Source: Adineta vaga (lineage: Eukaryota; Animalia; Rotifera). Taken from it: DNA of 64,000 nucleotides. Position numbers and translations under genes: made by a program. Of this stretch, positions 2,672-62,979 are shown one piece after another (position 1 is the stretch's first letter; each line of letters starts with the position of its first letter). The notes under the pieces are model-generated. The model was not told the origin of the DNA, did no database searches, and was given only the letters and a program-made list of their open reading frames with translations. Location of the stretch: the NCBI GenBank assembly GCA_021613535.1, contig CP075492.1:5518001-5582000 (forward strand). Direction: 5' to 3'.

Positions 2672-5600
2672 TCAATGTTTATGATGTACACCTGCAAAGA
2701 ATGATTGAGTTTGTAACAGATTATTAAATAATTCTTTTGAATCTTTTAAAGTTGTTGACATATCATTTGATACAGAATGACATTTGAATGTAAAGACTTC
2801 ATAGAGATATTCTAATAAACGATTCCATTGTTTATAATCTGATGAATAGAATTGTTCGAGATGATCGATGAGTAACTAGAAGATATACAAATGATGTTTA
2901 GTGATGAGAACAAAAAAACACGGGAAATTACTTGTATTTGTATTCCAAATAAAAGAATGGGATTGGATATTTGTGGTAATGTTAATCGACAAACATCTGA
3001 TAAACGATCAAGAAATGAGTCATGTTGATGATTGAGAAATTCTTTAATTTCATTTTCCATAGTTTCATGTTGAAAATATTCATTTATCGATTCTAAATCA
3101 AGAAATTCATTCATAAAACCAACTGACCGTTGTTGATATTTATCTGTCAAATATTCATAATGATTATGTAATTGTTGTAAATAAATTAAACGATTTAAAT
3201 TCGAAAGATTCTTTTGTCGAGCTAATGCACGAAGATTAGAAAATTTCTTTAAATCATTTTCATATTCATTCAAAGATAATCGATCATAGAGACAAAGTGA
3301 ACATTGACATGATCGAATTTGACATTGTTGAAGATAATTTGAACGTTCATTAATCGATGAAATCCATAATGGACAATAAGATATAGTTAATTCATCACCT
3401 TGTCGAACATTCGTTGAACAAATATAGATAAATAAATAATCACCAATTAAATACCATAAACAATTCGGTAAACATGAATGATTAAACATTGAACCTAATG
3501 AATACCAAGCAAGTGTTGATTGAGATTTATATGGATTTTGTCGTTGAGTTTCAAAGAGAATACGCCATGGAACGTATGGCAATGGTGGAGGTAATCGTCT
3601 ACAGAAAAAAAATGAGTCGAAATTATGAAATATTCTATTGTCTATTTACTTTGAAAACGGTTTTCTCCATTGTTTTTTTTCTGATAGAATTTCTTCATAG
3701 TTTTCCGGTAAATTCGATGATATTTCATTATTTTCTTGTTGTTTATTCATCTCTTCTTTTATATTTTCTGCTAACCATTGTCGTATTGGTTGCATTGATT
3801 TCATTTTTTCAAATGTTGTCCATGTATCATTACCAATCAATAATTGTTTTTCAATTTCATTTAATAAACGTAATGTCTCATTAGAACAATATTCAATTTT
3901 AGAATTTTCATCCCAATAATTCATTGTATGACAATATTCTTCGCCAATAATTCTATTATCAATACTTGCAAAGGGTTGTTCGACAACTAATAATGTTCCA
4001 ACATCGAGATTTTTCAATGCATAAACACCATATGAACCATTCGGATAACCATTTTTCGTTCTTTCTTCTGTCTAGAAAATATGAAAAAAAGACTTCTTTT
4101 TCTTTTTTGTCTTCCAAAAGTTCAATTCTCTACTTGACATAATCGAACTTCAAATAAATCATTTCGATGACATTCAGCATGATGATTTGGTAGATCAATA
4201 AACATTAATTGTGTTTTATTCTTCATTTGTTTTTGTAACATTCCTTGTAAATCATATCGTCCTTTTGTATTTTCATCTCTTAATCGTATTAATTCTCTTT
4301 CAAGTATGGCCATTGTTGTTAAATTTTCTCCACCCGATAGACCAAGACCAAATTTATGTGATTTTAATAAACCTTCAACTTTATCGAATAAACCAAGATA
4401 TAGATGAGCACTTAAACAACGAAATAGAAGTTTGCCTGTAGTTGCTTTTGGTAATTCAAGTATATGGGTTAATTCATTAAATGCAAGAAGAATACCCGTA
4501 TCAGCTAAAGCTAATGCTGCATGACGTTCACGTAGATAACAAGCACAACGATTCGATAGAAGACGAATGCGATGTTGTTCACGTTCATCTGTTTTTGGAC
4601 CGACTAAAATCATTGATTCATTTGTAAAGATTTTCAAATTCGATGTACTAGTACATACTTGATTGTCCTTTTAATGTTAATTCTTTTTCTTGTTCTTCAT
4701 CAAGTTGTTTTAAACCAAATGTATAATACTCAATTGCACTACGATTATCATCAACTTGATAACATGCATTACCCATTTGTCTCAATTGTTCGACATTAAT
4801 TCGATGACTCATCGAACAACGTTCTTCAAAATCAATCAGTAATAAATGTGTATTTGGTGATTCACAACGAAGTGATATATCACCATCAGAACATTTTTTT
4901 AACCATGGATCGAGTAGAACTATCGATGAATTCATTGGTAAGAGATTATTTAGACGTTCGTGAATATATTTTAACGTTTTGATTTGTCTTGTATCAATAA
5001 TATATGACCAATTGTAAATTGATAGACGAAGACAATGATGATTTTCATCTTGAACAACTACATGAACAGCTGAACGATTCCAAATTGGTATCGAGATAAT
5101 TTTTAATCGTAAATATGAATTTACATGTAAATGATCGATACGTAGAAGATTTATTTTCAATTGTATTGATGTTTCCATGCGATCCATCTGAACAAACAAA
5201 CAAATACTAATTTACAAAGAAAGATTTCTTTAATACTTGATCGGAGAATATATCTGGAACTAATGGAATCAATCGATATTTCATTTGTGAATTGAGATTA
5301 TTCTTCATAAAACTATACGTTGAATCATCTAACATAGTCTCAATTTGTTTAATAAATGCATTATGTTTTTCCAATAGAATTGATTTTGATATAGGTGTGG
5401 AATAAATCTCATGTTGATCCGTTTCATCGATTTGATGAGTACGAAATAATTGCGATAAAATATCTGGATAGGATAATTTATAATCAAATTTGGATTTTGT
5501 TGAAGGAAGATTGGACGCTTTTTTCGATTTTGTTTGTTGAAGATGTTTTAATTTTTCAGTTAAACGATCATGCCAATGTGATGGGCAATTTCGATTTGAA

Positions 5601-5695
5601 CAACAGATCGATAGATCAAGTTCATCAGCTAAACCGATAATAGCTGCATGAGGTGTAAGAATAGTTTTTTTAATTTTTGTTCGTGACTTCGGCAT
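2672..5695 (-). CDS. TPR + SET domain protein (putative lysine methyltransferase), multi-exon
   Basis: SET motifs 'GSYGVYALKNLDVGTLLVVEQP', 'MFNHSCLPNC', 'GDELTISY' and post-SET 'CQCSLC'. TPRs 'LRQMGNACYQ..AIEYYTFGL' and 'LLSNRCACYL'. Final exon after intron 2876-2931 ends in TGA at 2672-2674. Confidence 0.8.
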
Positions 5696-5995
5696 ATTGA
5701 TTTTCAAGATGAGAAAATCTGTTTAGTTAATCTAAAAATAATTCAACGACCAATCGATAATATATACAAATGTTTTTCTTTCGTTTTTCAGCGACATCAT
5801 GCGAAAAATGTTCGAGCATTTCACTTTCTTTTTTAGGCACTTGAAACTTTTTTCTTGTCACAAGTTTCTCTCTCTCTCTTGCTCGCTCTTTTACATGAAT
5901 TAAGACCATGTAAGTAAAGTACAGATCGAAAAAATTCTCTTTTTTTAAATATAAAACAACAGGTACAAACAGAAAATTGTGACTATATACTTACC

Positions 5996-6640
5996 ATGTC
6001 AGTAAAAGCACCGCGACATCCCGTACAAGCAAAATCATTAACTCTATTGGAACTATGTCAGACAATTCAAGACCTGCGGCGTACGTCCTCACAGGATGCT
6101 TCTCAAATTTTAACACGTCGTCTTTATTTTCATCCGATAAATACAAAATCAAATTCGAAACAACGTCAATCATCAAAATTAGTTGCTCGTGGTATACTTC
6201 AAACGACACCCTCTCAAAAACAAACGTCTCATCCTAATCTGTCTATCCTTTCATCCTCATTCTCTTTCGCAACACGTTCAAATTCTAAAATGAATTCATC
6301 AATTATGACTGATAATGATGATACGAATGAGTTAGAAATAAGTACAGTAACAAGTTCATTCAATCAAATTTCGCTAGCACCGATTACACAACGACCACCA
6401 TTATTAACAAAAAGACGAACAGCATTAAATCGATCATTATATATTCCAGATCGACAACTAGTTCAATTGACTGACAAAATTGATACGCAAAGATTGAATT
6501 TATGGAATTATATAAATAAGAAATTTGATCGTCCATGCCCGCAAGATCCACCGACAACACCCCTTCATAATTCGACTGATTTTGATATCCAACAACAAGA
6601 AAGTTATTATTCATTCCCAGATATTATAAACTATAAGTAA
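5996..6640 (+). CDS. Uncharacterised intronless 214-aa Ser/Thr/Gln-rich protein, head-to-head with the TPR-SET gene
   Basis: Long ATG-initiated ORF in AT-rich DNA with coding-like composition. No domain recognised. Confidence 0.55.
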   Translation: MSVKAPRHPVQAKSLTLLELCQTIQDLRRTSSQDASQILTRRLYFHPINTKSNSKQRQSSKLVARGILQTTPSQKQTSHPNLSILSSSFSFATRSNSKMNSSIMTDNDDTNELEISTVTSSFNQISLAPITQRPPLLTKRRTALNRSLYIPDRQLVQLTDKIDTQRLNLWNYINKKFDRPCPQDPPTTPLHNSTDFDIQQQESYYSFPDIINYK

Positions 6641-7638: not shown

Positions 7639-9253
7639 CTACTGTTGTTTGCATTCGGGTTGCTGTTGACCAGCACCGCCTTGCTTTCCGCCACGAGATT
7701 TCTAAATCCATCAAAGAAGAAAATTATTATGAATAATTTCATTGATACTTACACCACTGGGACCATGTTTACAATTGCCACCATGTTGGTGATGATGTCC
7801 ACCACGGGCACCACCATGACCTTCATGTTCATCATCTTCTTCATCATCATCTTCATCGTCATCTTCATCATCTTCATCTTCTTCATCTTCATCAAACTAT
7901 GAACACAAACAAAGAAATATATAATTTACTTAGATTTAATTTTACTTCTCCATCATCTTCATCTCCAACTTCACCGGTATAATAAAGTACAGCTTTTGGT
8001 ACAATTGAATCTCGTAACATATGACCAATTTCAAAATCAGCTGCTAACATTCTCATTTCATCACTATCTTCTATTTCAGCATCAGCATCTTCGGGTACTA
8101 AATACAAACACTTGTACATTTTCTTCTTCATTTCAGAAAGAGAATATTTACCAGTTGGTGGTGTAAAAAAGTTAAAGAATGAATCAGTTTGAACTTCTTT
8201 GGTTACCACACGAATTGTTCCACGATTCTTATGTTTTTGTCGTTTTTTGACCATTTTCATTGTGACATTTTTTCCTTTATTCCATTGAATTTCACATCCT
8301 TTCGATTTGATGATTTCTGGTCCTTCGTAGGATAATGGTTCATGCTCATCAGGTCCAGTGCGAAGTTCATAGAATTTGGTCAAAACAGTATTAGTAAAAT
8401 AGTCATTAGGTGTAAATTCAAATTCAATGGTGAAACCTTTTTCATTAGCTTCATTTTTCATTACAATACGAACATCACTAAGATGTTTAAGAACATCTTC
8501 ATCTTGTTCCTAATAAACCATAAGATTTATCAATGAATCGTTTATCGAAAGAAAACTTTACTTTGATTAATTCTGAAAGTACATCTGAATTTTTAAATAC
8601 TTGTAACCAAAATTCTGGAATACCGACTGTTTTTTCTAGAAATAATCTCTTTTAATCAAACATAAAACTCTAAATCAATGAGAACTACCTTCTTCTTTTT
8701 TTTCTTCTTCGTTAGTTTTCTTTGTTTGTTCATCAGTCTAAACAATTATGAATCTTCATTTCGACTATACAAAGGTTTCCATCATACCTCATCTTCATCA
8801 AATGCACATTTGCCTTCTTCTTCAGTTGGTTCATACTTACCTTTGACAATATTTAAACGCTAAAATAAACATTGAATTATTCTGCATCTTTTTTGAAAAA
8901 AACATTCTTTTTTCATACCTTTTCATAAAGTGGTTGATATTTGCTTAAATAACGACATTCAAGTGCATGAACTTCTTCGAAAAAGTTTGCTTCAATTTTA
9001 TGATGTTCTGCTTGAAGATTTCGAAGTGCATTTACACGTCGGACAACTTCAGCAGGTAAACTAAACGAAAAAACACACACACACACACACATCAAATTTA
9101 GACGAACGCAAGAGAAATTTCATCATACCTTCCAGCAAAAGACAATCCGTCATCACCCATTGAATCATTTCGATGTTGACCACTTTCAACAGTACTTGAA
9201 GCGGTTTCAACGGATGCAGGAGATGCTACTTGTTCATTATCATTTTTATCCAT
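7639..9253 (-). CDS. NAP1L1: Nucleosome assembly protein 1-like histone chaperone
   Basis: 'RRVNALRNLQ..EANFFEEVHALECRYLSKYQPLYEKR', 'GIPEFWLQV', 'FEFTPNDYFTNTVLTK', 'DSFFNFFTPP', 'DFEIGH', an acidic tail and C-terminal CaaX 'PECKQQ*'. Confidence 0.95.
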
Positions 9254-10616: not shown

Positions 10617-12534
10617 ATGGCTTTGTTTTCATTTGGATTATTATTCATTGTTGTTTTTATTCTATTATTTTTTCGTTATAAAACATGGATTATGAATTGT
10701 ATTAAAGTCTTGCGTACTTATGAAACAATTCCATGTCCATCGGGAAAATTACCAATATTGGGAAATCTATTAAATTTACCAATAAGTGCATATCGTAAGA
10801 ATGAAACTACCAAAAACAATGAAATATAAAGATCTATTTTTTAGATTTCTCGAAGAAACTTGATTTATTTTATGAAGAGGCGAAAAGTACTGATTTATAT
10901 TGTTTATGGCTTGGAACACATCCATTAATTGCCTTTTTTCATCCAGTTGGACTTGAAGTTTGTTATGAAATTTACAAGACGAAAATAAATGTCTTTTTCT
11001 CCTTTTAGCACTTTTTTGCTAGCTCAAAACATATTACCAAATCATCGGATTATATCTATCTTCATCCATGGTTAAGAACTGGTTTATTAACAAGGTTTGT
11101 CTTTATCTAAATATCAAAGAATGTTGCGTTACATGTCTTTTCTTTTTAGTACGGGTGCTAAATGGAAAAATCGTCGACGAATAATAACACCAGCTTTTCA
11201 TAATACAGATTTATTAAATAATTTCGTTGAAATTTTCAATGAACAAACTGCGATCTTAATTCAACGTTTACAATCAATTCAATCAGAACGAGAAGTCAAT
11301 TTATATCCATATATTGCATCATGTGCTCTAGATATTATTTGTGGTTGGTATTCTACAAAATGGTTTTCCTTCTAAAACTTTATTTCCTTGATATTTTAGA
11401 AGCAGCAATGGGTTTAAGTATTGGTGCACAACAAAAACGAAATTCTGAATATGTCGACGCAGTTTTAAAGTAAATCAAATTTTCATCGAATAAAAAAAAA
11501 CGTTTGTTTGATTTAGATTAACTGATATTATTTTAAAACGTCAACGTATGCCATGGATGTGGCCGGATATAGTATTTCAATTCTTACCTGAAGGACGTGA
11601 ACATGATCGACATTTAAATACTGTTCATCAATTTACAAAAAAAGTTATTGATGATCGTGCACGAGATTTCCATGCGAGTAATATTCAGGGCAAACGTTTA
11701 GCATTTCTTGGTAAAAAGAACTTATTTATCCGTATAAAATTCATCGTTTTGATTTCAGATTTACTTCTTAAACAAATGCATGAAGAACAATTAACACTTC
11801 TCGATATTCAAGAAGAAGTTGATACATTTATGTTTGAAGTAAAAGAAACATTGAACATGTTTGTGTATGTTTTGGACTTTTCGGAATATTTTAGGGACAT
11901 GATACAACTGCTGCGGCAATGAATTTTACTTGTTTTATGATTGCATCACATCCTAAAGTTCAAGAAAAATTACATGAAGAAATTGATCGAGTTTTTGGTA
12001 ATGATCTCAATCGTTCTTGTACAATGGAAGATGTAGATGAATTGAAATATTTGGAATGTGTTATTAAAGAAACACTTCGATTATTTCCGTCTGTTCCATT
12101 CATAGCACGTGAAATTCAAGAAGATTTTACGTATCGTAAGTCTAAGAATACCAACGAATATTTCTTTATATCGATTGTTTTTTTTTGTTATAGATAATCA
12201 TAAGTTATTAAAAGGTTCAACTGCTGTTTTATTTATTTATTACATACATCGTGATCCGAAATATTTTCCTGATCCGGAAAGATTCGATCCGGATCGATTT
12301 CTACCAGAGAATAGTGTTGATCGACCCGCATACGCATTCGTACCATTTTCAGCTGGTTCAAGAAACTGTATTGGTCAACGTTTTGCCTTATTAGAAGAGA
12401 AGATCATTCTTTCATCTATTTTAAGACGATTTAAATTGAAAACATCTCAATTACGAGATGATTTACACCTTTCATTCGAAGTTATTCTTCGTTCTGAAAA
12501 TGGTGCTTTTGTTCAACTTGAAATGCGACAATAA
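10617..12534 (+). CDS. Cytochrome P450, CYP4 clan (CYP4V/CYP4C-like)
   Basis: N-terminal TM anchor, 'WKNRRR', 'EEVDTFMFEGHDTT', 'KETLRLFP', 'PERFDPDRF' and heme motif 'PFSAGSRNCIG'. Confidence 0.95.
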
Positions 12535-20289: not shown

Positions 20290-23200
20290 ATGATATTTTT
20301 CCTTGTTTTTAATGTATGGTTGTTGATGACAATCAGTAGACATACGTCAGGTCAGTATTTAACGAAATAATTTTTCAGGGTAGTTTCTCTCATATACAAA
20401 CATATCACAGATTTTATTATAACCTAAATTTATTGAAATCTTTTTTTTTATCTTATCTAGCAATTTCGTACAATCAACCGAAATTTTGTCCGAATGCAAC
20501 GTGGAACATATCGGCAATAACTTTTGCGAGTGTTGCTGCAGTTGGTGTAGATCCATATGGTATTTTTGTTGATAAAAACAATACTGTCTATGTTGCTAAT
20601 CGACAGAAAAATGTCATTGTTGTATGGCAAGATGGAAATGCTGTTCCTATAAAAAATATATCGACAAATTTGAACACTCCAGCCAGTGTATTCGTTTCCG
20701 ATAATTATGATATTTATATTGATAATGGATTTTCAAATAATCAAGTGACAAAATGGTCAGCTAATTCATCGATGATGAGTCCAGAAATGTATATGTGCGG
20801 CTCGTGTTATGGTCTTTTTATTGATATTAATAATAATCTTTATTGTTCAATGTATACGAGAAATAAAGTTATTTCCAAATCATTATTAACACATTTAGTC
20901 CAATGGAATGTTGTTGCCGGTACAGGTGCTGCTGGAGCAACATCAATTACTCTCAACGTTCCTCGTGGAATTTTTGTCGATAGTAATCTTAATTTATATG
21001 TAGCTGATAGTACCAATGCTCGAATTCAAAAATTTCCATCAGGACAATTGACTGGAACAACAGTAGCAGGAGCTGCAGCAGCAGGAACTATTACACTCGT
21101 GAATCCGACTGGTGTTATTCTTGATGGTGACGGATATCTTTTTATTGCTGATACTAACAATAATCGAATTATTGCATCAGGATTATATGGTTTTTATTGT
21201 ATAGCTGGATGCACGAAAGCGGCTGGTGCAACATCGGTTCTATTAAATAAACCAATAACTCTTAGTTTTGATACTTATGGAAATATTTTGGTTACTGATC
21301 AAGATAATAACAGAGTACAAAAATTTCTTTTAGTGACACAATTATGCGGTAAACAAATTAAATTTGCGCTTCTCTTTTTTTCCGGCATTAGTGAGAAGCG
21401 AAAGAGTAGAGTTTATTTATTTTTGGAAGATTTGAATGACCTAAGAGTATATAAATCTATTGATTTTTACAAAGTATTAATCGTCTTCACTATGATTATA
21501 GACTCAGTTGTCATAAATATTTCTTTTCATTGTAGGTGAAACTACTACGACTACAATGATGACAAGTATTGAAAATATATATTCTTTCTTATCATGTGTT
21601 CTATCGTCGATCATTTTATCACTTTTTAGTTTCAACGGCGACAAATATCATTCAATCAACTTCATCATCGTCTACATCTTCACTTTACGGTAACATATTC
21701 AATAAAATGCATGTTAAATAAGAGGATGATAACTTGAGAGGTCGACTATTTTATTGCATGTATAAATTAAAAGCAAGGATACATTGAGAATTTCTATATC
21801 AAACTATCACAAGTCTCCGACATTACTAGAGAACTTCTATCGCAGAGATTTAGGCGTACGTTCTTTCAAATTCTTATTGTCAAACAATTCTAAGATCAAC
21901 GATAATGAATATAAGAGACGGGTGTGAACATCCACGAAAACGTTATGGAAGGAGTTAATGTATAAGGCAAGAGGACCCTACTTTTTTATTCACTCATCCT
22001 TTCGTTCACACTCTCACCGATATTTACTGTACGTCTTGACGAAAAAAATTTAATTTATGCGTTCTTTTCATGTGCTTTTTCAGTTACATCATATAATCAG
22101 CCAGAACTTAGTACTTCTGCTATATGGAATGGTAATGGAATAACGTTCGCTACTACTACTGTCATTGGCGCCACTCCATTTGGTATTTTTGTTAGTAAGA
22201 ATAATACTATTTACGTGGCTAATCGTGCAAATAGTCGAATATGTATATGGTCAGAAGGAAATAGTACACCTATCTGCATCACGAATGGATTAAATCTTCC
22301 TTATAGCGTCTTCGTTACAGTGTATGGCGATATGTATGTTGATAATGGAAATACGAATAGTCGAGTTGATAAGTGGTCACCAAATGGAACATCATATGGC
22401 GCGGCAATGTCTGTTACAAATCCATGTTATGGTCTTTTTATCGATATTATGAATAATTTATATTGTTCTATGGATGCAGCTGATCAAGTTGTAATGAAAT
22501 CATTACAAAGTAATTCATCTATGTGGATAGTAGCAGCAGGAACAGATTGTTCTGGATCAACATCAAATACACTTACAAATCCGCGTGGAATATTTGTCGA
22601 TACTGATCTTAGTTTGTATGTAGCTGATTGTGGAAATGATCGAGTTCAAAAATTTTTATCACAACAAATCGATGGCATAACAGTAGCAGGAAGTTCAACG
22701 ACAATTACACTTGATTGTCCGAGTGATGTTATACTCGATGGAAACGGATATCTCTTCATCGTTGATAGTAACAATGATCGAATTGTTGCATCTGGACCTG
22801 GCAATAGTTTTCGATGTATAGTAGGATGTTCGACTGTCGTTGGCTCAACTTCCAGTCAACTAAATAATCCAACAACAATGAGCTTCGATAGTTATGGAAA
22901 CATATATGTTGTCGATAGTACTAATGCTCGAATACAGAAATTTCTATTAATACCAAATACAACCTATCGTAAGTATAAATAGAATGCAGAATAAGACTTC
23001 TTTGATTCGAATTCTATCTTCTTATGACAACGTCGGTGTTTATCTAAACATTATGCTTTTTTAAATTAACAATGAAATTTCATTTATTTAGCTTATTCAT
23101 TCAATCAGCCAACTTTATGTCCATTTGTTACTTGGTCTATAAATGGAACTACTTTTGCTAACATCACATTGATTGGAGTAACTCCTTTTGGTGTTTTTGT

Positions 23201-26200
23201 TAGCATTAATAATACTGTGTACGCAAGTGATCGAATGAATGCTCGAGTTCAAATCTGGTATGAAGGCAGTACCATACCAGACAGAACAATTGCTTATGAA
23301 ATGGTTAATACGATGTATGCCCTCGCCACATCTTCAGGTGATATATATGTTGAGAATGGTTACACTAGGTTTCGTGTCGATTATTGGCCAGTTAATCAAA
23401 CGAGCAGTATTTCAATTCTATCAACTAATGGTCGATGTTTTACGATGTTTATCGATACTTCGAATGCTCTCTATTGTTCGATATCACTATGGCATCGTGT
23501 GACTAAAAAATGGTTGAACGATAATGGAACTACACCAATTCTTGTTGCTGGTACAGGTACTGCTGGAGCAACTGCAAATCTACTTAATCAGCCTTTGGGC
23601 ATCTTTGTTGATCTTAATTTTAATCTATACGTTTGTGATTGTATAAACAATAGAATCCAAAAATTCCTACCAGGAGCAACCGATGCTATTACTATTGTTG
23701 GAAATGGAGCACCTTCTACTATAGCTCTAAATTGTCCACAAGGAATTACTTTCGATACTAATGGTTATCTTCTTTTTACTGATCAAAGTAATCGTTTGAT
23801 AATGTCAGGACCATATGGTTTTCGATGTTTGTTGGGATGTTCGCAAATTGCTGGTTCTTTACCTAGTCAATTTAATGTTCCAATTACTTTTAGTTTTGAT
23901 AGCTATGGAAATCTATTTATTGTGGATCAAAATAATAATAGAATTCAAAAATTTCTTCTAACATCAAATATTTGTGGTAAATACTCAACTTTTCTTTTTA
24001 TTCCAATGATTTTATCTATTAGAAAATTCTAAAGTTTTATCGATCTCTTTTTGTTCTAGGTGTATCAAATAGTCAATTAACCTATTCTTCAAATATATTA
24101 TGTTATTCGAATGCTTCGACTATTCTGGCGAATGATACTATTGGCTTCTCACCATATGGCATTTTTATTGATAGTTTTAATACTATTTATATAGCTAGTC
24201 AGAGTAAAAGCAACGTTTTGATGTTGCCTCAAGGAAGTACTATACCTATGACTATTCTTTCTGGTAGTTTCAATCGACCCTATAGTATTTTCGTTTCTAC
24301 AACTGGTGATATTTATGTCGACAATGGTTATGCTAATGGTCGTGTTGATAAAATTATATACAGTACTATATCGAATGTCATTACCGCTATGAATGTACCT
24401 GGAAGTTGTTATGGATTGTTTATTGACGTGAATAATTATCTCTATTGTTCTTTAAAAACTTACCATCGAGTTAATAAGATATTGCTTGATAGTGGTACAA
24501 ATTTTACAATTGTTGTAGCAGGAAATGGTTCAGCTGGTGCATCAGCAAATATGTTAAATTCTCCACAAGGAATCTATGTTGACAATAATTTAACTTTGTA
24601 TGTAGCAGATTGTATGAATAATCGTATTCAAAAATTCTTATCAGGAATATCGGATGGAATCACAGTTGCCGGAAGTTCAACATTACCAGTGGTTACACTT
24701 AATTGTCCAACGGGAATTGTGGTGGATATCAATGGATATCTGTTCATTGTTGATAGTAATAATCATAGGATATTGGGATTTTATTTTTATGAAGTCCGAT
24801 GTTTAGTTGGATGTTCTGGTAGTGGTGGTTCCGCAGTTAATCAGTTATCTTTTCCACAAAGTATGGCATTTGATAGTTATGGAAATATTTATGTTACTGA
24901 TCGAAATAATAGTCGAATTCAAAAATTCACTTATGTATATAGCGATTGTCGTAAGTTGTTGATTGTTATAATGATTACTTTAGAAGTATTCCAGAATGAA
25001 GATAATACGTTGTCAACTACTTGCATAGACCACACAAAAATGTTATATTTTGAATAAAGAGAAGCATAAAAAACTAGTCAATTTCTCTCATTCTAACATT
25101 ATATATTCTCTTTGTATATAGAGTTGAGCTGCTTAGAGTTTCATCATAAATTCACAAAGTTACAAAACTTGTTTGTTTTAGCAACAACAACTAGCACCTC
25201 GACCACTACAATATCTACCTCATCCTCATCGTCCACCTCAAGTTCTAGTTCGTCCACTTCTTCTACAACAACGTCATCGTCCACCGCATCAACTTCCTCC
25301 TCAAGTTCTACGTCGTCTACAACGTCTTCATCGTCTACATCCTCTAGTTCTAGTTCGTCCACTTCGTCTACATCCTCCTCGAGTTCTACGTCGTCTACAA
25401 CGTCTACATCCTCCTCGAGTTCTACGTCGTCTACAACATCCTCATCGTTCGCATCATCAACAACAACGTCGTCGTCCACAGAATCAACATCCTCTTCAAG
25501 CTCTACGTCGTCCACAACGTCTTCATCATCTACATCCTCCTCAAGTTCTAGTTCATCAACAATAACGTCATCGTCTACATCCTCCTCAAGTTCTAGTTCA
25601 TCAACAATAACGTCATCGTCTACATCAATGACGACCAGTACAATCTCATTAGTCAACACAAGCACTACTTCTACACAAATTACGAGCGTTATCGAAACAA
25701 CTATTGCTTTGAGTACAATTTCACCTATAGATACAACTAAAATCTCAGAAACACCTATACTGAATCAAAGTAATAAAGTAAACACGTATGAAACTATCTA
25801 TTGGTAAAATTTATTCTAGGTTGTTATGCTCCAACTATTATCCTCATGCCGGGAAAATCATCATTATCATCACCAATAATATATCGACGAAGTCAAGATT
25901 TCTCAATAGTTTCCATTTTGAAACTCTCTTGTAAAAGTTCACTTTCAACAAGTATCGTATGGACAATTAAAAATTGTACTTCAACTACTTGTTTAACTAC
26001 AATCACCCTCAGTAAAAAATAGCTATCACCTTTAGTGAACTTTATATTCCATCGAGAACTTTAGCTTATGGAGTTTATGAATTAACATTGAATGTAAAAA
26101 TGACAGCATTACCTCAATTAAAATCTTCATCTACTGTCTATGTGAAAATAACTCCATCAGGTATTACAGCTAATCTTGTTCCATTAGGAACATCAATGAT

Positions 26201-29200
26201 TACACGAGGTGATCAACAAGATCTTTTATTCGATCCTGGAACATATTCTGTTGATCCTGACGAAGATTCATTTGATGCTACGGTAATTATTGATATTCAA
26301 AAGATTTCCTAATATTCTTTCTTTTTTGTATTGTAGAAATGGAAATATGAATATTATTGTCGAATCTATCCTCAATGCAATTTTCCTAATTTACAAGGTG
26401 TACTATTAACCATCAACGATTCAACAATTGATCCTTTAAATCCATCATGTTTATCAGGTAAAAACTATCTTTTCTTATTTAGTTATTTAGTATCTAATTA
26501 CATTTTTTTATGAAACAAAAACAAAAAGGTAATGGTACAAAATTAATCTTTGGAAATTCAAGTTTATCGCCAAAATCATCTCTGATCATTCTTCCTGGTT
26601 CACTTCAAACCAATCAAATGTATCAATTTATGGTATATATGGAAAGTCGTAAAAATTCATCGATTCAAGCTACTGGTTATGTTCTTGTTACAGTCGAAAT
26701 TACCCGTCCACAATTAATCATCATCGGGTATTTCGTCTTTCACATTTCTAATGATTGTCATAATTCTTAATCACTTGTCTTGTTCATTTAGTTGTGTTAT
26801 ATCATCAATGTGTATTCCTAATCTTGAATTTCAGTTACTTAATCCAACAACACAAGTTGCTCTAACTAGTTTCTGTACTGGAACTTGTGCAAATCTTCAA
26901 TATATGCAATGGAATATTTATCAAGGATCAAACAATTCATCATCATTGAATTCTACGAAATGGACACTATTTAATTCTTCAATTTCATATGAAAATATTT
27001 GGTTTTTCGGTAGATATACAAATAATTTTACTGCTACAAATCAATTATTACTCAACAATTCTCATATTGATTTTTGGCGATTTGAAGTTGTCTATACATT
27101 TCTCTCAGAAACAAGTTCAAGTGCATTAAATTTTGTAATCAATCAATCTCCTATCAATGGTTCATGTTCAATCTATCCATATACTGGTACAACAAGTACT
27201 TGGTTTAATGTTTCATGTTCAGATTGGTTTGACGAAGATGATATCAAAGATTATTCTTTATATGGTATTTTGATTTGTATTTGAGAAGGATTCAATCATT
27301 GAATAAATATTCTATTTTAGTTTGGACAACGGATATTTCCCAGCAAGCGATCATTGCTTTTTCGTCGGAATCTACTTTTCAAGTACGTCTTCCACAGGGT
27401 GATAATCAAACATCATTACTCAATATTATTATTCATGTTCGCGATCTTCTGAATTGTATTACAAAAGTAAACATGACAATGGTACGTGTTGTACTTGATC
27501 TAGATGAAATTAATAATCTACAAAATTCAGTCAACAAATCAAATGATAATCCAACTGTTCAATTACTATGGAGTGCAAATCAGAATATCGTTGGACAAAT
27601 AATAACTTCACTTTCACCAGTATTCAATCAGATGAACATGGAAAATATTAACAATGCTATTTCAGGTAAATAATCACCACTCTCATCTTTTGGAAAACTA
27701 ATTATATCTGCTCGTTTCCACTAGATGGTCTTTCAGCAGTAGAAATCTATGTATCATCCTTAGAAAGTACATCTTCTGAAAAGGTAAATTGTACGTAAAT
27801 GAACATTTATATTTCGTTAACTTTTTTTTTTCTAGATGATATCAACATCGATGAATGAATCGGTTCTGATTGAATATGAAAAAGAACTGAATTCTCAAGC
27901 AAATATTCGAGATTATCTAATACAATTTTATTCCAATTTACTTATAACAACATCGAATAGTATTATTTTACAATCCTCATCATTAGTTCAATTAACTCAA
28001 GCAACAAATCAACTAACACGAAATACGTTACAAATTGCATCAAATCGATGTTATCAATTAGCACTTGCTCTTCATGCAATGTCAACAAAAATCTCCTGTG
28101 AAGATAATCAAATGGCAACAACTCAATTAATTCAATGTGCATCAAATGTATTAACGGTAAGAGTTATTCGTCGATTATATATAAAATTATTTCAATAACT
28201 AAATCTAGGCAGTCAATGGTCCTTTACAAGAAAGAATTATAATACTTGATATAGATTATTCTCGAGCTAATTCATTACCTGAAGATTATGATACAGATAT
28301 TGAATCTGAATGGTCAAATTTAAGTAAGAGTCGATATTTTGAGTTCACCTATGATTTATATTTTGTATAGATTTATTTTCTGATGGAAATGATTTTTCTA
28401 TTGAAACAATTGAAAAGAATCGAAATATTTATTATCAAAAACAATTAGCAAATGAAATAATCAATCAAGCAAATGAAATTATATCTTTACTAACATTTTC
28501 ATCCAATATTCATTTAAATATTGGACAAAATTTAACTATAAATACATCCAATGCATTTATGTCATTACAAACGGTATCAATCGATTCGTTTTCCAATCGA
28601 ATGATAACTCAACCGAGCAACAGTAAATTTCATATTCCATCAAATATGACAATAAATATCACCAATACTTCTCCAATTTTGCTTCGAGTAAACTTTATTG
28701 AAAAAAGAATTCCTTGATAAAATATGTTTTTTCTTCTATTTAGTCTCTGATGAATCCACTTGCTTCGTTTGGAAATAATCAATCCGATTCGAATACAAAT
28801 ATGTCACGATTAATTTCACTTTCAATATTCGACAAAACTGGAAATGAAATTTCCATTCAAACAAATAGTGATAATCCAATTCGATTCATCATACCACGTG
28901 ATCCTAATCTTCTGATTCCATCTATGAATTTACAAAATGTAATCTCAATGAATTCAACTGATCATCATTTATTATTTCATTTACATTATATAAATATAAC
29001 CAATGCACTTCCAATTTCGATTCATTTTGAAATGCGTTCATTAGATCCAACACTTGCTTATTTATTTATTTTTAAATTTGATCAAACACCTTTATTGAAT
29101 AGTTCAATCAATCTTATTGATGGATGGTCACTTTTATGTCCTTCACGTATGAATGAAAGTATGTTTACATATTTTATTGATAATCAACAAACAATTGGTC

Positions 29201-32200
29201 GTCAATCGTTAATATTTGGTTTACGGGAATTAAATTCAACGGAGAGTCTTCAATTTTGTTCAAATAATTCTTCTCAAAATGATCTTCCAATTACAGATCA
29301 TCGATTTAACTTTACATCCAATTATGAACTTCGTATTTATACATCAGGTTGTTATTATCTTGATTCAAATAATAATTGGAAATCAGATGGATTGAGGGTA
29401 AGTTTTACATTTTTCTTTATTCTAGAAAAAATTGTTTGATTATTGCATAAAGGTTGGTTCATTAACAAATCATTATGAAACCGAATGTTTTTCTACACAT
29501 TTGACATCATTTGCTGGTGGGTTCATTGTTTTACCAGCACCCATTAATTGGAATTATGTTTTTGCAAATGCTGATTTTCTTAAGAATAAAACAGTTTATT
29601 TTACTGTTATTTGTGTGTCAACTTTATATATTATTCTCCTGATCTATGCACGATTTAAGGATAAAATTGATTTGAAAAAATTAGGAGTAACACCATTACC
29701 AGATAATCATATATCCGATCAATATTATTATCAAATTATTGTTTTAACTGGTCAACGAAGTAATGCTGGAACTGAGTCGAAAGTACGACATTCTTTTATT
29801 CCATGAAACTATTCTAATCAATCTTTTCGTTTAGGTTTATTTTGTACTATCAGGTAATGCTAATCAAACTAATGTTCGAACATTTTCTGATCCTCATCGA
29901 AAGATATTTCAACGTGGTGGTATTGATGCATTTATAGTATCTGTTCCTGAATCATTAGGACTGTTAAATTACATTCGTATTTGGCATGATAATTCAGGTG
30001 AAGGTTCATCAGCATCATGGTTTTTGAAATATATCATTGTTCGAGATTTACAAACAATGGATAAATTTCATTTTATTTGTCAAAAATGGTTTGCAGTTGA
30101 AAAAGACGATGGACGAGTAAGTTAAGAGTTTTATTTTCAAATGATATTTAACTTTCTAATTTGTATTAGATTGAACGTCTTTTACCAGTTGCAAGTGACC
30201 TGGAGAAAAAAGAATTTTCATATTTATTGACAAAAAAAACATATCATAGTATTTCGGATAAACATTTATGGATTTCAATCTTTTCACGTCCGCCATCCGC
30301 AAAATTTTCATGTGTTCAACGATGTACATGTTGTTTTGTTCTATTCTTTTCTTCAATGTTACTAAATATTATGTACTATGATCTATCAAATGACGCAAAA
30401 ATGTCAAATAAAACAACAACTTTCGATTTATCGTTTGGTCCAGTGCATATCACTCCTGAACAGGTATGTGTAATACTATTATTAGGGATATCTACAGAAG
30501 TTTATTGTAGATTGGAATTGGTATTATGGTTGAATTATTATCATCAATTCCAAGTATTTTATTAATTGAATTCTTTCGACGTATTCGAACTCGTCAAAAA
30601 ACAACCCCTTTACGTCAAGTCTTCTATAAAATCAATCCAAATACTCAAAAGTTCGTCAATACTTTCTTTAAAGATTAAACTAATCTTATTTTTTTTTCTC
30701 AGTAATTCAACGATTGTAAATTCAGTAAAAAAATCTCGATCACAAATAACATTTCCTTGGTGGTGTTTATTTATTGCTTATGCATTTTCATTACTAATTA
30801 TTCTCATATCGATCTTCTTTATCGTTGTTCGAGGTATTGAATTTGGTGATGTAAAAGTACAAAAATGGTTAGCATCTGTTCTAACAGGATTCTTTTCATC
30901 GATTCTACTCAGTCAACCTATTAAAGTAAAGTTTACATTCATTTATTTTTAAATAATGATTGAAAAAAACGATTTCGTTTTTTTTCTCTTGAAGATTGTT
31001 TGTTTGGCTATATTTTTCGTGTGCTTCTGTCGAAATTCTAATGATGATACAGAAACAAGTGAATATATTGATGATTATCAAATGACTTTGAATGATGATG
31101 AAGAATATTTTCAATCAGCTAACGTATAATAATTTATTTGTTTTTCTTTTCTTTTAATCGATTTTGTTTTTAGAATTATTCTTTATTCAATTCACAAGCT
31201 CAAAAACATAAACATCTCAATGAAGGTGAAGTAACACATGCTCGTGAACAACGTTTAAAAGACCTACAAATGTGGTCAATTATTCGTGAATTTATTATTT
31301 ATTTCATATTTCTTTTTTTAATTTGTTCAATAACGTATGCAAATCGTGATTATAATAGTTTTCATGAAGTTCATCATTTACGAAAATATTTTTATAATAC
31401 TCGACAAATCAACAATGATTTTACACGGGTTTGATTTCTTTATTTTATCTTTTCGTTATGTAAAAGAATTTTCGATTTTTAGATTTTAACGGTTGATAAA
31501 TTTTGGGAATGGTTAGAAACGAGTTTTCTATCGAATATTCGTGCTCAACAATGGTATAATAATGATATTCCTAAGTATTTAAATGGATATATCAATGATA
31601 AATCCAATCGATTAATTGGATGGGCAACAATGAGACAATTACGTGTCCAATCAGTTTCATGTTCTGATCAACGAATTCAATTGATTTGTGAACACAACTA
31701 TAATTTCTTGAATGAAAATAAACAATCATTTCCATTCGATTGGTTTAATCAAACAACAGATGAAACATATAGTTCATCGATAATCAAAGCTTTTCAATAT
31801 CAAACAAGTGATGAATTAGATACATATATTTATATAGGTGAACATGGAACATATGGTGGAGGTGGTTATGTCTATGAATTTCGAGGTCGATTAGAAGAAC
31901 TTCAAAGTAATGTATCAAAACTTCATGAATTAGAATGGATTAATGAACAAACAAGAGCGATTATTATTCAATTGACGTTATATAATCCCAATGTTCAATT
32001 ATTTACATCTGTGACATTTCTTCTGGAATTCTCATCAACAGGCGGAGCTTTTCCAACTGCACGATTTGAACCATTGAACTTTTATAGTAACTTTTTTTTT
32101 GATTATTTCTCAGATCACATACTTTCATTTCTGTTTTTAGCATTTACATCACTATTTCAATTGATATGTACGATTATTTATATGGGTTTCATTATTTATT

Positions 32201-33173
32201 TTACGATCCTTCAAATTCAATTATTTTTTCAATTAAAATTCAACTATTTTTATCAGTTCTGGTCATTAATCGAACTTGGAATTATCATTTGTTCATGGAC
32301 AAGTCTTGCCATTTATATCTGGCGTTTCAAAGAATCTCATCGTATAAGTTCTTTATTTAAACAAACCAATGGATATGTTTACATAAATTTACAATTTGCA
32401 GTTTATATCAATGATCTTCTAACATATCTTCTTGGTTTTTCATGTTTTTTTAGTATGATTAAATTTCTTCATTTAATTCGTTTCGATCATCGTTTATTAT
32501 TATTTACTCAAACTTTACGACATGCTAGAAAAGAACTTATTTCATTTTTAATGATGTTTTCGATTGTCTATATGTCATTTGTTTGTTTATTTTATCTATT
32601 ATTTCTATCGAATATATCGTCATGTTCAAGTTTATTATCAACAGCACAAATGTTATTCGAAACGACATTAATGAAATTTGATACCAGTGAATTAATACAA
32701 GCTGATGCATTTCTTGGTCCTTTGGTATTTGTCATATTTATATTTTTAGTTGTTTTTGTTTGTTTGAGTATGTTTCTTTCAATTATTAATGAAAGTTTTC
32801 GATGTACACGAGAGAATCGAATGAAAGATGTGGAAATGTTTGGATTTATGATGAACAAATTTTTACGTTGGACAGGTACGATTCTTGTTTTGTAGGAAAA
32901 ACGAAGAAGATTTGTTTGATTTTATGTTAGGTTTAAAGAAAACAAGTGAGATAGAAAATTATGCACGACGAGAATATTCGAATGCGTTCGAAATATATTG
33001 ATTCAATAGAAGGTTTTCCAGTGAAAGTTGATCAATTATTGGCAGCAATTAATAGAGTAAATTGAAAATCTTTGATATATTAGAAGAAGAAAAAAACTAA
33101 TTTTCTCTTCTTTTTTTAGTTGTACATCGATCAAAAAACGGATATATTGAGATTGGAAAGAAGACGTTATTGA
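20290..33173 (+). CDS. Giant polycystin-1-like (PKD1L/REJ) receptor-channel: signal peptide, 4 NHL beta-propellers, Ser/Thr stalk, REJ, GAIN/GPS, TM, PLAT, PKD channel; two apparent frameshifts
   Basis: NHL motifs (P.GIFVD..LYVAD..N.RIQKF). REJ-like 'P.NGSCSIYP.TGTTSTWFNVSCSDWFDEDDIKDYSLY'. GPS 'CYYLD...WKSDG...ECFSTHLTSFA'. PLAT 'AGTESKV..FQRGGIDAF..IRIWHDNSG..SWFL'. TOP/channel 'YGGGGYV..WINEQTRA..LYNPNVQLF', 'FLGP', 'MFLSIINESF'. Confidence 0.85.
25182..25660 (+). repeat. Degenerate coding tandem repeat encoding a poly-Ser/Thr mucin-like stalk
   Basis: Recurrent 'tcctcctcaagttcta(c/g)', 'acgtcgtctacaac' units encoding TSSSSSTSSTT variants. Confidence 0.9.
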
Positions 33174-33572: not shown

Positions 33573-35134
33573 TTAGTTTTGTTCAAAATGTCTAGTGAGA
33601 TTTTCACTTTCTTTTTTGTCATCAACATCTGTTGCACTAGACACATATTGATTTCGTCGTAGTTTATTATTTCCACTTGATAACGTTTGTTTCGTTGACG
33701 ATCGACATATACCAATCGATTTGTCTTTCATCGTTGTTGTACCAGTGTTAGTCGATATTGATTGTTGTTTACTTTCTTCAGGACATGATGTTAATGTTCG
33801 TCCTGTTGTTGTTGTTCCATTAATACGAATACGTGTACGTTGTCGAGTTTTAATATCTTTATTTGAAAGTTTATTTCGTTGTTTATAACACCATCGACAT
33901 AATTTATGAAAGATTAATCGACGAAATTCATTACGAAATCTTGCTCCACTGATAAAATAGAGGAAAAAATTCACGACATGCATTAAATCAGATGTAATAT
34001 TCGATATTAAATACATCACAGCCGATGTTTGTACATAAATATCTAGATTTCGATAGACATTATTGTCACATTTCACCGCTTTCCAACTCTCAATAAAAAC
34101 ACGTAAGAAGATCATTAAATAATAAATCGCATTTGGTAATGTTAAGACAAAAAATGAAATCGAAATTGTAATCAACATAATTGTTATTTGAAGATTTTGT
34201 GATTGTACACGTGCACGATTGCTAACTGATGAACGAAATGGATTACTTGATGTTCGTGATACCGATGTTGATTCATGTAAAAGTGATGCATCACGACGTG
34301 CTCGAAATAGAGCAAGAAAAATTGCGGCATTTAATATTGAAATAACAATAAATGGAATAAAGCACCAAAAAAATGCATCAAGGATAAAAACAAGTTTTTC
34401 ATCTTGAGGTGTTTCAAGCCAACAATAAGCATTATTTTTCAATACAGTTCGACTGGCATGAACAGATGCAACAAGCATCGAACAGATAATGACAGCAATG
34501 ACAACAGCATATGCTTTCTTTCGTGACAATAAATCGGATACACGTAATGGTAGACATACAGCAAGAAATTTATCGGCATTCATCGCAGCAATAAGCCACA
34601 CTAAAATGTACAATAACAGTGATGATGATGATGATTAAAACTTGATTGATAAGAGAAAAAAATAAAGAACTTACCGGTTGTGTAGTTCACTGCATTAACC
34701 ATTAGAAAAAGAAATTTACATAATCCAGTTGTTAGAATATGTTTATTTGCTGAGAAACTTGATAATTCTCCGAAAAGAACACGTAATGCAAAAAAAGCTA
34801 CATCACATATAGCTAATGTTTGCATGTAGAATGCAATCGATGATGATCGATTCATTCGTGTTCGTCGTAAGATATAAAAAGCACATAGATTTAAAATAAT
34901 GGCTGGTAAAATAAAGAATCGATTGAGATTATGTGTTATATAACGAACAATATTGAATAAAGGTTTTTGAGAAATATATTCATATTTGATTTGAATACAT
35001 GTTATATTCGAATTTTTACTAATTAATTGATCAGTAATCAAAAAGGAGATATTATCAAAGATAGGTAATGATGGAGATAATACCGATCCATTCGATAAGT
35101 GTGAATATGTTGAAAGATTAATAGATTGATTCAT
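33573..35134 (-). CDS. Class A (rhodopsin-family) GPCR, invertebrate peptide-receptor-like
   Basis: N-glycosylated N-terminus, seven hydrophobic segments, 'LAICD', 'MNADKFLAVCLP', 'FFVLTLP', 'VNFFLYFISGARFR'. One coding intron ~34602-34674. Confidence 0.9.
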
Positions 35135-38100
35135 GGTTCATTTTTTCACATAACATACTGGTTTTTTTTATTCGAATCTGAAAGAAAGAAAGAAAGAAAG
35201 AAAAGGTATAGAAGCAATTATGTTAATAATGTAAAAGAAAACATTTGTATTCAATAACATATATTGATTCTAAAATATTCTTTTCGAGAAAGAAAACGGT
35301 GTGTTTTTTTTGCGTGTCTTGAAGGGTCTGTGTTTATGCTTTCGTTTTCATGCGTAAATCTAGAGACAACTGGTCTCTAAAATTTCTTTTCAATCATAAA
35401 GATATAAAGGAATAAAATATACAATGGTAACAAGTTTTCTCAAGTGTATGCGTCTGCTAACGTAACTAAGCGAACCAGTTGTCACACAATTAATAGTAAT
35501 GATGATGTGAATAGGAGCTAACATGTTATATGTCTTCTTTCTTTCTTTCTTCTTCTTCTTCTTCTTCTTTGCCTTCTCTTACGTCAAATAAAGAACAATA
35601 ATCGAAACGTTGTATAGAGATTTTTAACAATATAATGAATGACTATATAGCGTGTGTGTGTGTATGTATACACACAAATAATAATATCGATTAAGAGCTG
35701 ACTACTATCAAATCTATATGGGTGTATAATATAACAAATTTATTTGTCTAGATTTTCAATAGTTCGAACATGCAACGCACATTCATCAAGTCAGTTTCTA
35801 TATTTTTTCTCAGAGAAACACACACACAGACTTATCTTATTGTTATTGTTGTTTTTATTAAGAAACACTTCATTGAATTGAAAGTAATCGAAGCATATAT
35901 GAAATCAATCTCTCTATGCTTCCGTCGGTTACTTCCATGTGTCAACTATAATAGAACAAACGCTTGTCGGACAATTATTATCAATTGACAGAATTAAAAT
36001 CACAAAAGAAAAAAGAAAATATTAATCTATCGTACTAATTCACTTTTCTTCTCAAAAATAGATGCATCGATATACTTGTCATCTGTCACCGAATATGTTT
36101 CTATAAAACATCTAGAGCAAAAGAGAAGAAAAAAAACTAAATCTTAATATACAACATGTCTATCTTTTGTAATTAGTCTTTTGATTCTCACTATGATTAT
36201 CAATAAGATCGGATATATAGACTTGTAATTAACTCGATCTATGGAAGCATAAGATAGTAGATTAACTATTAGTTTGACGAACTTTTCTGATGATACTTAT
36301 GTATATATATATATTGTTATGATAGGTGGTAGAAAGATCTTTTTTTTTGTTAGCTTGTCAATACATACTTGATTGCCTTGAAGCATAACGTACAAGTATT
36401 CTCTCTTTCTTTCTTACAATGTTTTTTTCTCGCATCATTGATACTAAGAAATGTTTAGTTTCCGAGAAGAAGAAAAAATGGAAAAGTAATAGACATAGAG
36501 CAGAAAAAAAAACATATTTTGGGAATTCTAATTACTCGTCGATAATTGCAAAATATTGGCGAGTTATTCGATACATTAGTGCGTTTTACGATCATAGTAG
36601 CAAAAATAAACTCGACTAATTCACTTTCTCTTCTCTTTTCTATATCGAACTCGTTTTCCATTAGAATAAACTAAGATCAACAGTCATTGTTAATATATTC
36701 AGCATTGAACCAAAACCGATTCTTCCTATGCACAAGTGACTTTTATACTTACAAATGGAATAAATATGTCCTTATATACCATTACTTTCTCATTGTCATA
36801 GAAGTCATATGAAAAAGATTTTCTTGTTTTTTTTTGACAGAAAAATGCAATCTATAGCTCAAGAATGTCTTTCATTTTCTTTGTGTGTATATTACACTAA
36901 TACTAATCCTGAAAAGAATTGAAGAAAAAAACCATATTTGGTTCATTACCTTCTCTTTTGTTGTCATCAGAGATAAGAATCAAAATTGAATTTCATGCAT
37001 TTCTACAGATAATAAAATATGAAATTATTCCGAAAAAACAACAACATCGAGGATTGTTCTAGATCTATTACAATATCGTATTATAAGAAATAGAATTGAA
37101 GAAAAAAAAGCTCAACTTCATTGTCTCATGCTCGATTTTCTTTTTTCTCTTCCTCTACACATAGACTCTCCTTCTTTCTTTCTGTCAATAAGAATGTACG
37201 AAGTAATTATTTTGTTGATGATTGTTAAGTACGTCGTTCTCAAAGATATCAAGTTGTTCTCATCATCATCATCATCATGTACTTTGAAAAAATTGTCATA
37301 ACGATTGAAATCCTCTCGTTTCTAATAAAGATATATTTCTAATCAAATCAACTACTAATAACATTTACATAGAATTTCACTTTCATATATGTCGAAATTA
37401 AATATTCAAGTATGTAGGAAGTGTAAAATAAAATATGTATTTTTAATAAGAAAAAAATTACACCTTGCAATTGATATTTAATTTCATAGGCGACAAATAT
37501 TTCTTCGCAACATAAACTTAAAAGAAAAATTGACTGATTTTCATCGATTTGAACAAAGAAACACATCTTTTATTACATTCTTAATATGGAATCATATATC
37601 GGAAATATGTTGAGTGTATTCATTCCAATTAAAAGTATGATATTCAATCACGGAATGAAGCACATCATTCAGTAATATTTCACATAAGAATCATTATCTT
37701 ACTAATAGAACAAGAAGAAAAATGTGAAATGATATTTGATGCGTAAAGTCATATTTTTCATATTCAATAGCATTCGAAAGGAACAGAAGAATTAGATCTT
37801 ATTTTATGCTGACATATTTCCGCTTTAAACTCACATGTCTCATTGAACATTAGCAAAAGTTAAGTTAACATAGTTTCTATCCAAAAGGAAGTCACAAGTG
37901 TAAAAATCTCATTTAAAATTAGTAACATATCATCATAATTAGCAGCGGAAAAAAGTGAATTTACTGAAAAAGTTCGTACGAGAAATCTAACCACGTGCTT
38001 ATTATCTTCTAACGACATCTGATATAGATTGTGTATAAAATAAAATTCAATAGTTTAACTAACTAATAATCGATTGGTTTCCGAATGATTCAGTTTAAAA

Positions 38101-61670: not shown

Positions 61671-62979
<1,309 letters not shown>

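What the first reader, a model, noticed from the sequence alone, without database searches (positions are those of the whole stretch)
20290..33173. Polycystin-1-like receptor-channel whose ectodomain is four NHL beta-propellers on a mucin-like stalk
Seen: one collinear spliceable unit of signal peptide, NHL x4, poly-Ser/Thr stalk, REJ, GPS with intact HL|T autoproteolysis consensus (HLTSF), PLAT and PKD channel. Established: characterised polycystin-1 family ectodomains use LRR, C-type lectin, WSC, PKD-Ig or SUEL modules, while NHL propellers are best known from cytosolic TRIM-NHL proteins, teneurins and many bacterial proteins. Inference: a lineage-expanded, possibly foreign-derived propeller has been recruited as the sensing head of a GPS-cleaved channel receptor. 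This could be a functionally undescribed chemo-, mechano- or pathogen-sensing system.
Basis: partly seen in the sequence, partly recalled or inferred. Interest (0 to 1): 0.85.

Follow-up and report, generated by a model that had tools for sequence, protein, structure and literature searches.

The report
Rotifer polycystins with swappable propeller heads
The rotifer Adineta vaga has expanded a polycystin-1-like sensory receptor-channel into about 55 genes, most carrying one to five interchangeable beta-propeller heads (four in this gene), which looks like an undescribed repertoire of surface sensors, though no transcript or function has been shown.

Summary
The window is Adineta vaga chromosome DNA. 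20290-33173 is one 29-exon GT-AG gene: signal peptide, four single-exon six-bladed NHL propellers, Ser/Thr stalk, REJ, GAIN/GPS (HL|T), PLAT, TOP and TRP channel. The one at 26013 is an assembly error (Illumina contigs of two studies carry the missing A at full depth); the one near 32955 is untested. The gene is not unique. About 55 loci carry the GAIN exon, at least 32 with same-strand propellers directly upstream. Adineta and Rotaria species share the architecture, often split in annotation. 49 of 49 propellers start at a phase-1 acceptor, one paralog joins propeller and REJ in a single open frame, and a second head type arose three to four times on the body tree (p-AU 0.0002). The pore has Lys at the position of PKD1L3 Lys2069, so it probably works as the one receptor subunit of a 1:3 channel with PKD2. 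A bacterial origin of the propeller is suggested by scores, not shown. No RNA evidence. Other first readers in this scan noted the same architecture at paralogous loci. I found no paper describing it.

The parts
20290..20350 (+). Exon 1: start codon and signal peptide
   Evidence: Hydrophobic N-terminus by inspection; relatives P0284, P0287, P0271 begin the same way; phase-1 donor
20461..21348 (+). Exon 2: NHL propeller 1 (phase 1-1)
   Evidence: Pfam NHL E 2.8e-17; best match is propeller 1 of orthologues
21536..21689 (+). Exons 3 and 4 (21536-21565, 21630-21689): short Thr/Ser linker
   Evidence: GT-AG, phase 1-1, open; not confirmed by RNA
22084..22968 (+). Exon 5: NHL propeller 2 (phase 1-1)
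   Evidence: Pfam NHL E 1.4e-18; AlphaFold pLDDT 92, six-bladed propeller
23092..23976 (+). Exon 6: NHL propeller 3 (phase 1-1)
   Evidence: Pfam NHL E 2.7e-10
24060..24950 (+). Exon 7: NHL propeller 4 (phase 1-1)
   Evidence: Pfam NHL E 2.7e-25
25182..25769 (+). Exon 8: mucin-like Ser/Thr stalk, 195 codons
   Evidence: 84% Ser+Thr; a longer stalk at the same place in A. steineri L026
25820..27665 (+). Exons 9-13: REJ module; one A missing from the assembly at about 26013
   Evidence: Pfam REJ; A inserted at full depth in contigs of two DNA runs
27725..29397 (+). Exons 14-18: helical region and GAIN domain
   Evidence: Model of the orthologue P0272 matches GAIN domains of BAI3, BAI2 and latrophilin best (E 7e-6, low TM)
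29453..29782 (+). Exon 19: GPS (His 29498, Leu 29501, Thr 29504), tethered stalk, TM1
   Evidence: HL|T/S conserved in most relatives; TM helix by hydropathy
29835..30116 (+). Exon 20: PLAT domain
   Evidence: Pfam PLAT E 2.5e-15
30170..31428 (+). Exons 21-25: TM2 to TM6 region
   Evidence: Open, in phase; hydrophobic segments
31483..32086 (+). Exon 26: TOP (polycystin) domain
   Evidence: Pfam Polycystin_dom E 3.7e-36
32141..32875 (+). Exon 27: TRP-type channel part; filter Lys at 32674-32676
   Evidence: Pfam PKD_channel E 3.3e-34; Lys aligns to PKD2L1 Asp523, kept in 109 of 132 relatives
32931..33173 (+). Exons 28-29: cytoplasmic tail; one extra base at about 32955-32958 relative to orthologues
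   Evidence: not covered by reads

Best explanation
A functional member of a bdelloid-wide, much expanded family of polycystin-1-like (PKD1-like) receptor subunits whose outer heads are exon-shuffled modules. Shown: the gene structure, the fusion, the family size, the head exchange and the conserved GPS and pore residues. Inferred from PC1 and PKD1L3: the ~3500-residue protein is cleaved at HL|T and sits in a membrane, probably ciliary, as the single receptor subunit of a 1:3 channel with a PKD2-type partner, giving the Lys of a KDDD filter. The four propellers, held out on an O-glycosylated stalk, bind an outside ligand or surface with their variable top faces. Binding or pull on the head exposes the tethered stalk after the GPS and changes calcium entry or G-protein signalling. 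Different paralogs give different specificities, so the family most likely serves contact or chemical sensing of food, microbes or substrate.
For: Exon model in phase and break at 26013 removed by reads. 55 GAIN-exon loci; 15 of the 20 closest paralogs have 1-5 propellers directly before REJ, and 16 more loci by position. 49/49 propellers have a phase-1 acceptor at the same place, 48/49 a phase-1 donor; the exception (L002) runs through a short stalk into REJ in one open frame. Gene models with NHL, REJ, PLAT and channel in Rotaria sp. Silwood1, R. magnacalcarata, R. socialis, A. steineri and A. vaga, and with NHL x4, REJ, GAIN and GPS in A. ricciae. 'NHL-only' models in A. steineri sit directly before REJ models. 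dN/dS 0.26-0.42 against orthologues in head and body. Sib-like heads need 3-4 changes on the body tree, one clade rejected at p-AU 0.0002; L010/L013 bodies 97% identical in DNA, heads 76%; L005/L008 bodies 95% with four and two propellers. Positions flanking each blade's Pro have mean entropy about 2.8 bits against 1.45 overall. Filter Lys (PMC8357825). Ligand-to-head, stalk exposure and calcium mechanism shown for PC1/PC2 (PMC12513491). Planarian pkd1-like genes serve chemo- and mechanosensing with pkd2 partners (PMC11448475).
Against: No RNA run holds this stretch, so splicing and expression are unproven. The break near 32955 is untested. No ligand, cell type or cleavage is known. PKD2-type partners in this genome were not verified. 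Variable surface loops are expected without positive selection, and no pair gave dN/dS above 1. Allele differences were 19 non-synonymous to 11 synonymous, which is only moderate constraint.
Confidence: 0.62

Rival explanations
1. Innate immune receptor family. The propellers are pattern-recognition modules from the same pool that other A. vaga genes use, and the PKD1 body turns recognition of microbes into calcium entry. Same anatomy, defence role.
For: Fast head divergence and exchange; variable top face; about 1000 propeller candidates in the genome; earlier scan notes report hypervariable propellers on ART, caspase and DED genes (not checked here); PMC3846280 lists NHL expansions among possible defence genes.
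Against: No dN/dS above 1 in the pairs tested; the four-propeller order is kept between A. vaga and A. steineri. Known invertebrate PKD1-like proteins are sensory. No expression data on infection found.
Confidence: 0.2
2. Mechanical or adhesive tether. The propellers and stalk anchor the protein to cuticle, mucus or matrix, and the complex senses force or flow, or the shed ectodomain has a structural role. Head diversity is largely drift.
For: Long mucin stalk and tandem heads suit a tether; planarian pkd1L-2 is needed for mechanosensing; 5-6 N-glycosylation sequons per propeller.
Against: A pure tether does not need about 55 paralogs with divergent top faces and repeated head swaps.
Confidence: 0.12
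3. Two genes, or a pseudogene: a secreted NHL x4 protein followed by a separate headless PKD1-like gene, or a decaying copy with two frameshifts.
For: Databases often split such loci. An in-frame stop and an AATAAA-type hexamer lie in intron 7. Two frame breaks in the assembly. No RNA.
Against: Conserved phase-1 donors, the single open frame in L002, no signal peptide on the split REJ models, the 26013 break absent from reads, purifying selection. The hexamer is expected by chance in 70% AT DNA.
Confidence: 0.06

Closest known systems
PKD1L2 / PKD1L3 and PKDREJ (vertebrate PKD1-like proteins)
   Same: REJ, GAIN/GPS, PLAT, TOP and TRP channel in the same order; Lys at the filter position of PKD1L3 Lys2069.
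   Different: Their heads are C-type lectin and SUEL lectin, or PKD repeats (PMC5318412). Here four NHL propellers. A handful of genes there, about 55 here.
Polycystin-1 (PKD1)
   Same: GPS HL|T, tethered stalk, PLAT; best PDB sequence match of the orthologue's post-GPS region.
   Different: No LRR, WSC, C-type lectin or PKD-Ig repeats found.
C. elegans LOV-1 and planarian Pkd1L-1/2/3
   Same: Invertebrate PKD1-like sensory receptors working with PKD2; LOV-1 has a Ser/Thr-rich mucin region (my knowledge).
   Different: One gene in the nematode, three in the planarian (PMC11448475); no NHL mentioned for them.
NHL propellers: M. tuberculosis PknD sensor domain, TRIM71/Brat, teneurins, Bacteroidota T9SS proteins
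   Same: Six-bladed fold, TM about 0.73-0.77. PknD is the closest analogy: an extracellular NHL sensor on a transmembrane signalling protein.
   Different: Here secreted-type with conserved cysteines and sequons, one exon per propeller, tandem, on a channel subunit.
Adhesion GPCRs
   Same: Shuffled extracellular modules over a GAIN domain, lineage-specific expansion.
   Different: The body is a PKD1-type 11-TM channel subunit, not a 7-TM receptor.

Membership tests
PKD1-like polycystins | REJ module | tested here: met
   Pfam PF02010 over cut-off in exons 9 and 12
PKD1-like polycystins | GAIN domain with GPS HL|T/S before TM1 | tested here: met
   HLTSF at 29498; orthologue model best matches GAIN structures, E 7e-6 but TM only 0.3-0.4; Pfam GPS weak, E 0.006, under cut-off
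PKD1-like polycystins | Actual autoproteolysis at the GPS | not testable with these tools
   Needs protein expression
PKD1-like polycystins | PLAT domain after TM1 | tested here: met
   Pfam PF01477 E 2.5e-15
PKD1-like polycystins | TOP domain and PKD channel | tested here: met
   PF20519 and PF08016 over cut-off
PKD1-like polycystins | Eleven transmembrane helices | tested here: inconclusive
   Exon-by-exon hydropathy found 8 helices over threshold; helices split by introns or weakly hydrophobic were not counted
PKD1-like polycystins | Non-acidic filter, needs a PKD2 partner | tested here: inconclusive
   Lys in place of PKD2L1 Asp523; partner candidates seen only as positions; PF18109 search rang nowhere
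PKD1 (PC1) orthologues proper | LRR, WSC, C-type lectin and PKD-Ig repeats | tested here: not met
   No such Pfam hit in the propeller or REJ exons scanned; the other ectodomain exons are signal peptide, Ser/Thr linker or stalk
NHL beta-propeller | Six four-stranded blades with NHL repeats | tested here: met
   Pfam NHL; AlphaFold pLDDT 92; Foldseek to Pizza6, Thin, PknD, TRIM2/3/71
TRIM-NHL | RING, B-box, coiled coil, cytosolic | tested here: not met
   Signal peptide directly before propeller 1; no such domain
Horizontally acquired domain | Nested among bacterial sequences in a tree that includes animal homologues | tested here: inconclusive
   Profile scores: T9SS-tailed proteins 216-275 bits, TRIM71 181 bits. 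Tree lacks animals; sister grouping with Bacteroidota-type repeats is weak
SMP-30 / lactonase or PAL-type propeller enzymes | Conserved catalytic metal ligands on the top face | tested here: inconclusive
   Pfam SGL under cut-off; top-face positions vary among paralogs, which argues against an enzyme; ligands not mapped one by one

The most novel reading that the evidence does not exclude
Bdelloids have built a diversified recognition repertoire on a ligand-gated ion channel: a propeller of bacterial origin was turned into a phase 1-1 exon cassette and plugged, in one to five copies, onto dozens of PKD1-like subunits that share a few PKD2 partners. This would be a combinatorial chemosensory or immune receptor family that signals through polycystin channels.
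Probability: 0.3. Interest if true: 0.85.

Novelty: new variant of a known kind. Interest (0 to 1): 0.6.

Why it matters
The ligands and activation of polycystin-1-type proteins are still open questions. A natural family with one conserved body and many compact, single-exon heads offers ready-made pairs to test whether binding at the head gates the channel through the tethered stalk. It also shows that PKD1-like genes, a handful in the animals compared here, can expand into a receptor repertoire as adhesion GPCRs do. If the propeller is bacterial, a foreign domain became an exon-shuffling module in an animal receptor.

Tried and rejected
RNA support: no RNA run holds the stretch; the two non-genomic or RNA-like runs laid showed only paralog fragments and no exon joint. 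Pseudogene reading of the 26013 break: rejected by reads. Separate NHL gene: rejected as above. Pattern scan of bacterial genomes gave only weak hits of 29-31% identity and is not a fair test of origin. PF18109 search for PKD2 rang nowhere and is uninformative. PDB search with exon 19 found nothing. Supplements of the fungal-infection paper held no relevant annotation. Paper searches found no description of NHL-bearing polycystins or of a bdelloid PKD1 expansion, but the library lacks many subscription papers, including the 2013 genome paper.

Full report
Origin. The genome has 100.8 Mb in six contigs. The window's contig length, 20,354,754, equals that of the contig carrying Adineta vaga I4U23 proteins, and the named close protein hits are all bdelloid rotifers. 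The window is A. vaga.

Gene structure. From the sequence I set 29 exons between 20290 and 33173. All 28 introns are GT-AG and the phases agree. The order is signal peptide, propeller 1, two small Thr/Ser exons, propellers 2-4, a 195-codon stalk that is 84% Ser+Thr, REJ, GAIN, GPS with TM1, PLAT, further TM exons, TOP, channel and tail. Pfam confirms NHL, REJ, PLAT, Polycystin_dom and PKD_channel exon by exon. The four propellers are 42-54% identical to one another. AlphaFold gives propeller 2 as a confident six-bladed NHL fold. A model of the orthologue's pre-GPS region matches GAIN domains best, though weakly.

Two frame breaks. The assembly lacks one A at about 26013, which would stop the protein at the start of REJ. 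Contigs from a 2013 and a 2021 DNA run both have the A at full depth, so this is an assembly error. A second break, one base too many at about 32955-32958, shows against orthologues. It also lies in an A run but was outside the one stretch I could lay with reads. If real, it costs about 50 C-terminal residues.

One gene or two. No RNA run holds the stretch, so the evidence is comparative. The GAIN exon matches 55 loci in this genome by my count. Of the 20 closest, 15 have one to five propellers directly before REJ. Sixteen more loci have a same-strand propeller within about 8 kb upstream, from a list that scored only 132 of 1016 candidates. With the window's gene that is at least 32 of 55. In all 49 full-length propellers examined a phase-1 acceptor lies at the same place, and 48 end at a phase-1 donor. 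The exception, L002, reads from propeller through a short stalk into REJ with no stop and no donor, which is the fusion seen directly in DNA. Gene models with NHL, REJ, PLAT and channel exist for Rotaria sp. Silwood1, R. magnacalcarata, R. socialis, A. steineri and A. vaga, and an A. ricciae model has four propellers, REJ, GAIN and GPS. Two A. steineri 'NHL x4 only' models lie just before REJ models, so annotation splits hide the family. At those loci the four propellers match the window's four in the same order. Rough dN/dS against orthologues is 0.26-0.42 in both head and body.

Swappable heads. Four of the 20 paralogs carry instead a domain that the Atlas groups with rotifer 'integrin beta-like' (Sib-like) proteins. 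Relatives elsewhere carry FG-GAP repeats, a uromodulin D8C domain, or NHL plus EGF. On a tree of the REJ-GAIN body, built inside a script from separately matched exons, the Sib-like heads need three to four changes, and holding them together is rejected (p-AU 0.0002). Near-identical bodies differ in their heads: L010 and L013 are 97% identical in body DNA and 76% in the heads; L005 and L008 are 95% identical with four and two propellers. Across 29 propellers the residues flanking each blade's proline, which form the ligand face in known NHL domains (my knowledge), average about 2.8 bits of entropy against 1.45 overall. No pair showed dN/dS above 1, so positive selection is not shown.

Mechanism. 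The GPS reads HL|T and is kept in most relatives. In the pore, the window's Lys aligns with Asp523 of PKD2L1 and is kept in 109 of 132 relatives. PKD1L3 has Lys2069 at the filter entrance of a 1:3 channel with PKD2L1 (PMC8357825). For PC1/PC2, ligand binding at the N-terminus exposes the stalk and raises calcium permeability (PMC12513491). Planarian pkd1-like genes act with pkd2 genes in chemo- and mechanosensing (PMC11448475). I therefore infer a cleaved receptor subunit that needs a PKD2 partner and senses through its propellers. Several channel-domain hits without a nearby GAIN match are partner candidates but could not be fetched. Sensing of chemicals or surfaces is my first choice (0.62), defence second (0.2), a pure tether third (0.12).

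Origin of the propeller. With a profile of the heads, T9SS-tailed and named Panacibacter proteins score 216-275 bits per 300 residues, against 181 for TRIM71 and far less for other solved animal NHL domains. A search with the best unnamed bacterial-type repeat returned Bacteroidota and bdelloids, and no other named eukaryote among the top 120. In a tree of three blades the heads form one clade (SH-aLRT 95), apart from Acidobacteria-type repeats and only weakly beside the Bacteroidota-type ones. The bacterial set was picked for similarity, the animal set is limited to the PDB, and the tree has no animal rows. I put a bacterial origin at about 0.55.

Novelty. NHL expansion in A. vaga is mentioned in the literature (PMC3846280). 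I found no paper on NHL-bearing polycystins or on this expansion. No non-bdelloid REJ protein appeared in my searches at all, so they cannot exclude the architecture in other animals. Shuffled ectodomains on PKD1-like proteins are known in kind (PMC5318412). The head type, the family size and the repeated exchange appear undescribed. This scan's first readers noted the same architecture at five other loci; those notes are not independent support. Verdict: real, a new variant of a known kind, interest 0.6.

Noticed in passing
window 25287-25457: Contigs of both DNA runs show a joint that goes back 171 bases inside the stalk exon: the stalk may be longer in one allele or collapsed in the assembly. 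171 is a multiple of three.
   Followed up: no
window 33576-35137 (-): Rhodopsin-type GPCR gene (Pfam 7tm_1) lies tail to tail with the polycystin gene, about 400 bases from its stop.
   Followed up: partly
L001, L007, L011, L016 (about 3600-6500 in gene orientation): PKD1-like paralogs whose head is a Sib / integrin-beta-like domain with no Pfam family.
   Followed up: partly
L006: A paralog close to the window's gene on the body tree lacks a head and the first REJ exons within 10 kb upstream; probably truncated.
   Followed up: partly
L026 24264-24622; L028 18834-19352: A. steineri loci with a duplicated channel fragment, and with a repeated REJ exon and no GAIN within the stretch held: signs of turnover in the family.
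   Followed up: no
G000 C2:13895324, C2:10877230, C4:9562944, C2:10213783, C6:8870595, C5:5940362, C2:14387049, C3:7599924, C5:6212491: PKD_channel hits with no GAIN-exon match close by: candidates for PKD2-type partners or divergent PKD1-like genes.
   Followed up: no
L026 1136-4119 (-): A PAN/Apple plus NHL gene near the A. steineri orthologue: the propeller is also used with other modules.
   Followed up: no
window 11512-12531 (+), 61656-62555 (+), 50485-52209 (+), 7895-8509 (-): By eye from translations: a cytochrome P450, an actin, a gamma-glutamyl carboxylase-like gene and a nucleosome assembly protein. An ordinary host neighbourhood.
   Followed up: no
L013 4500-5387: Part of the first propeller aligns out of register with L010, suggesting a local frameshift or assembly error.
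   Followed up: no
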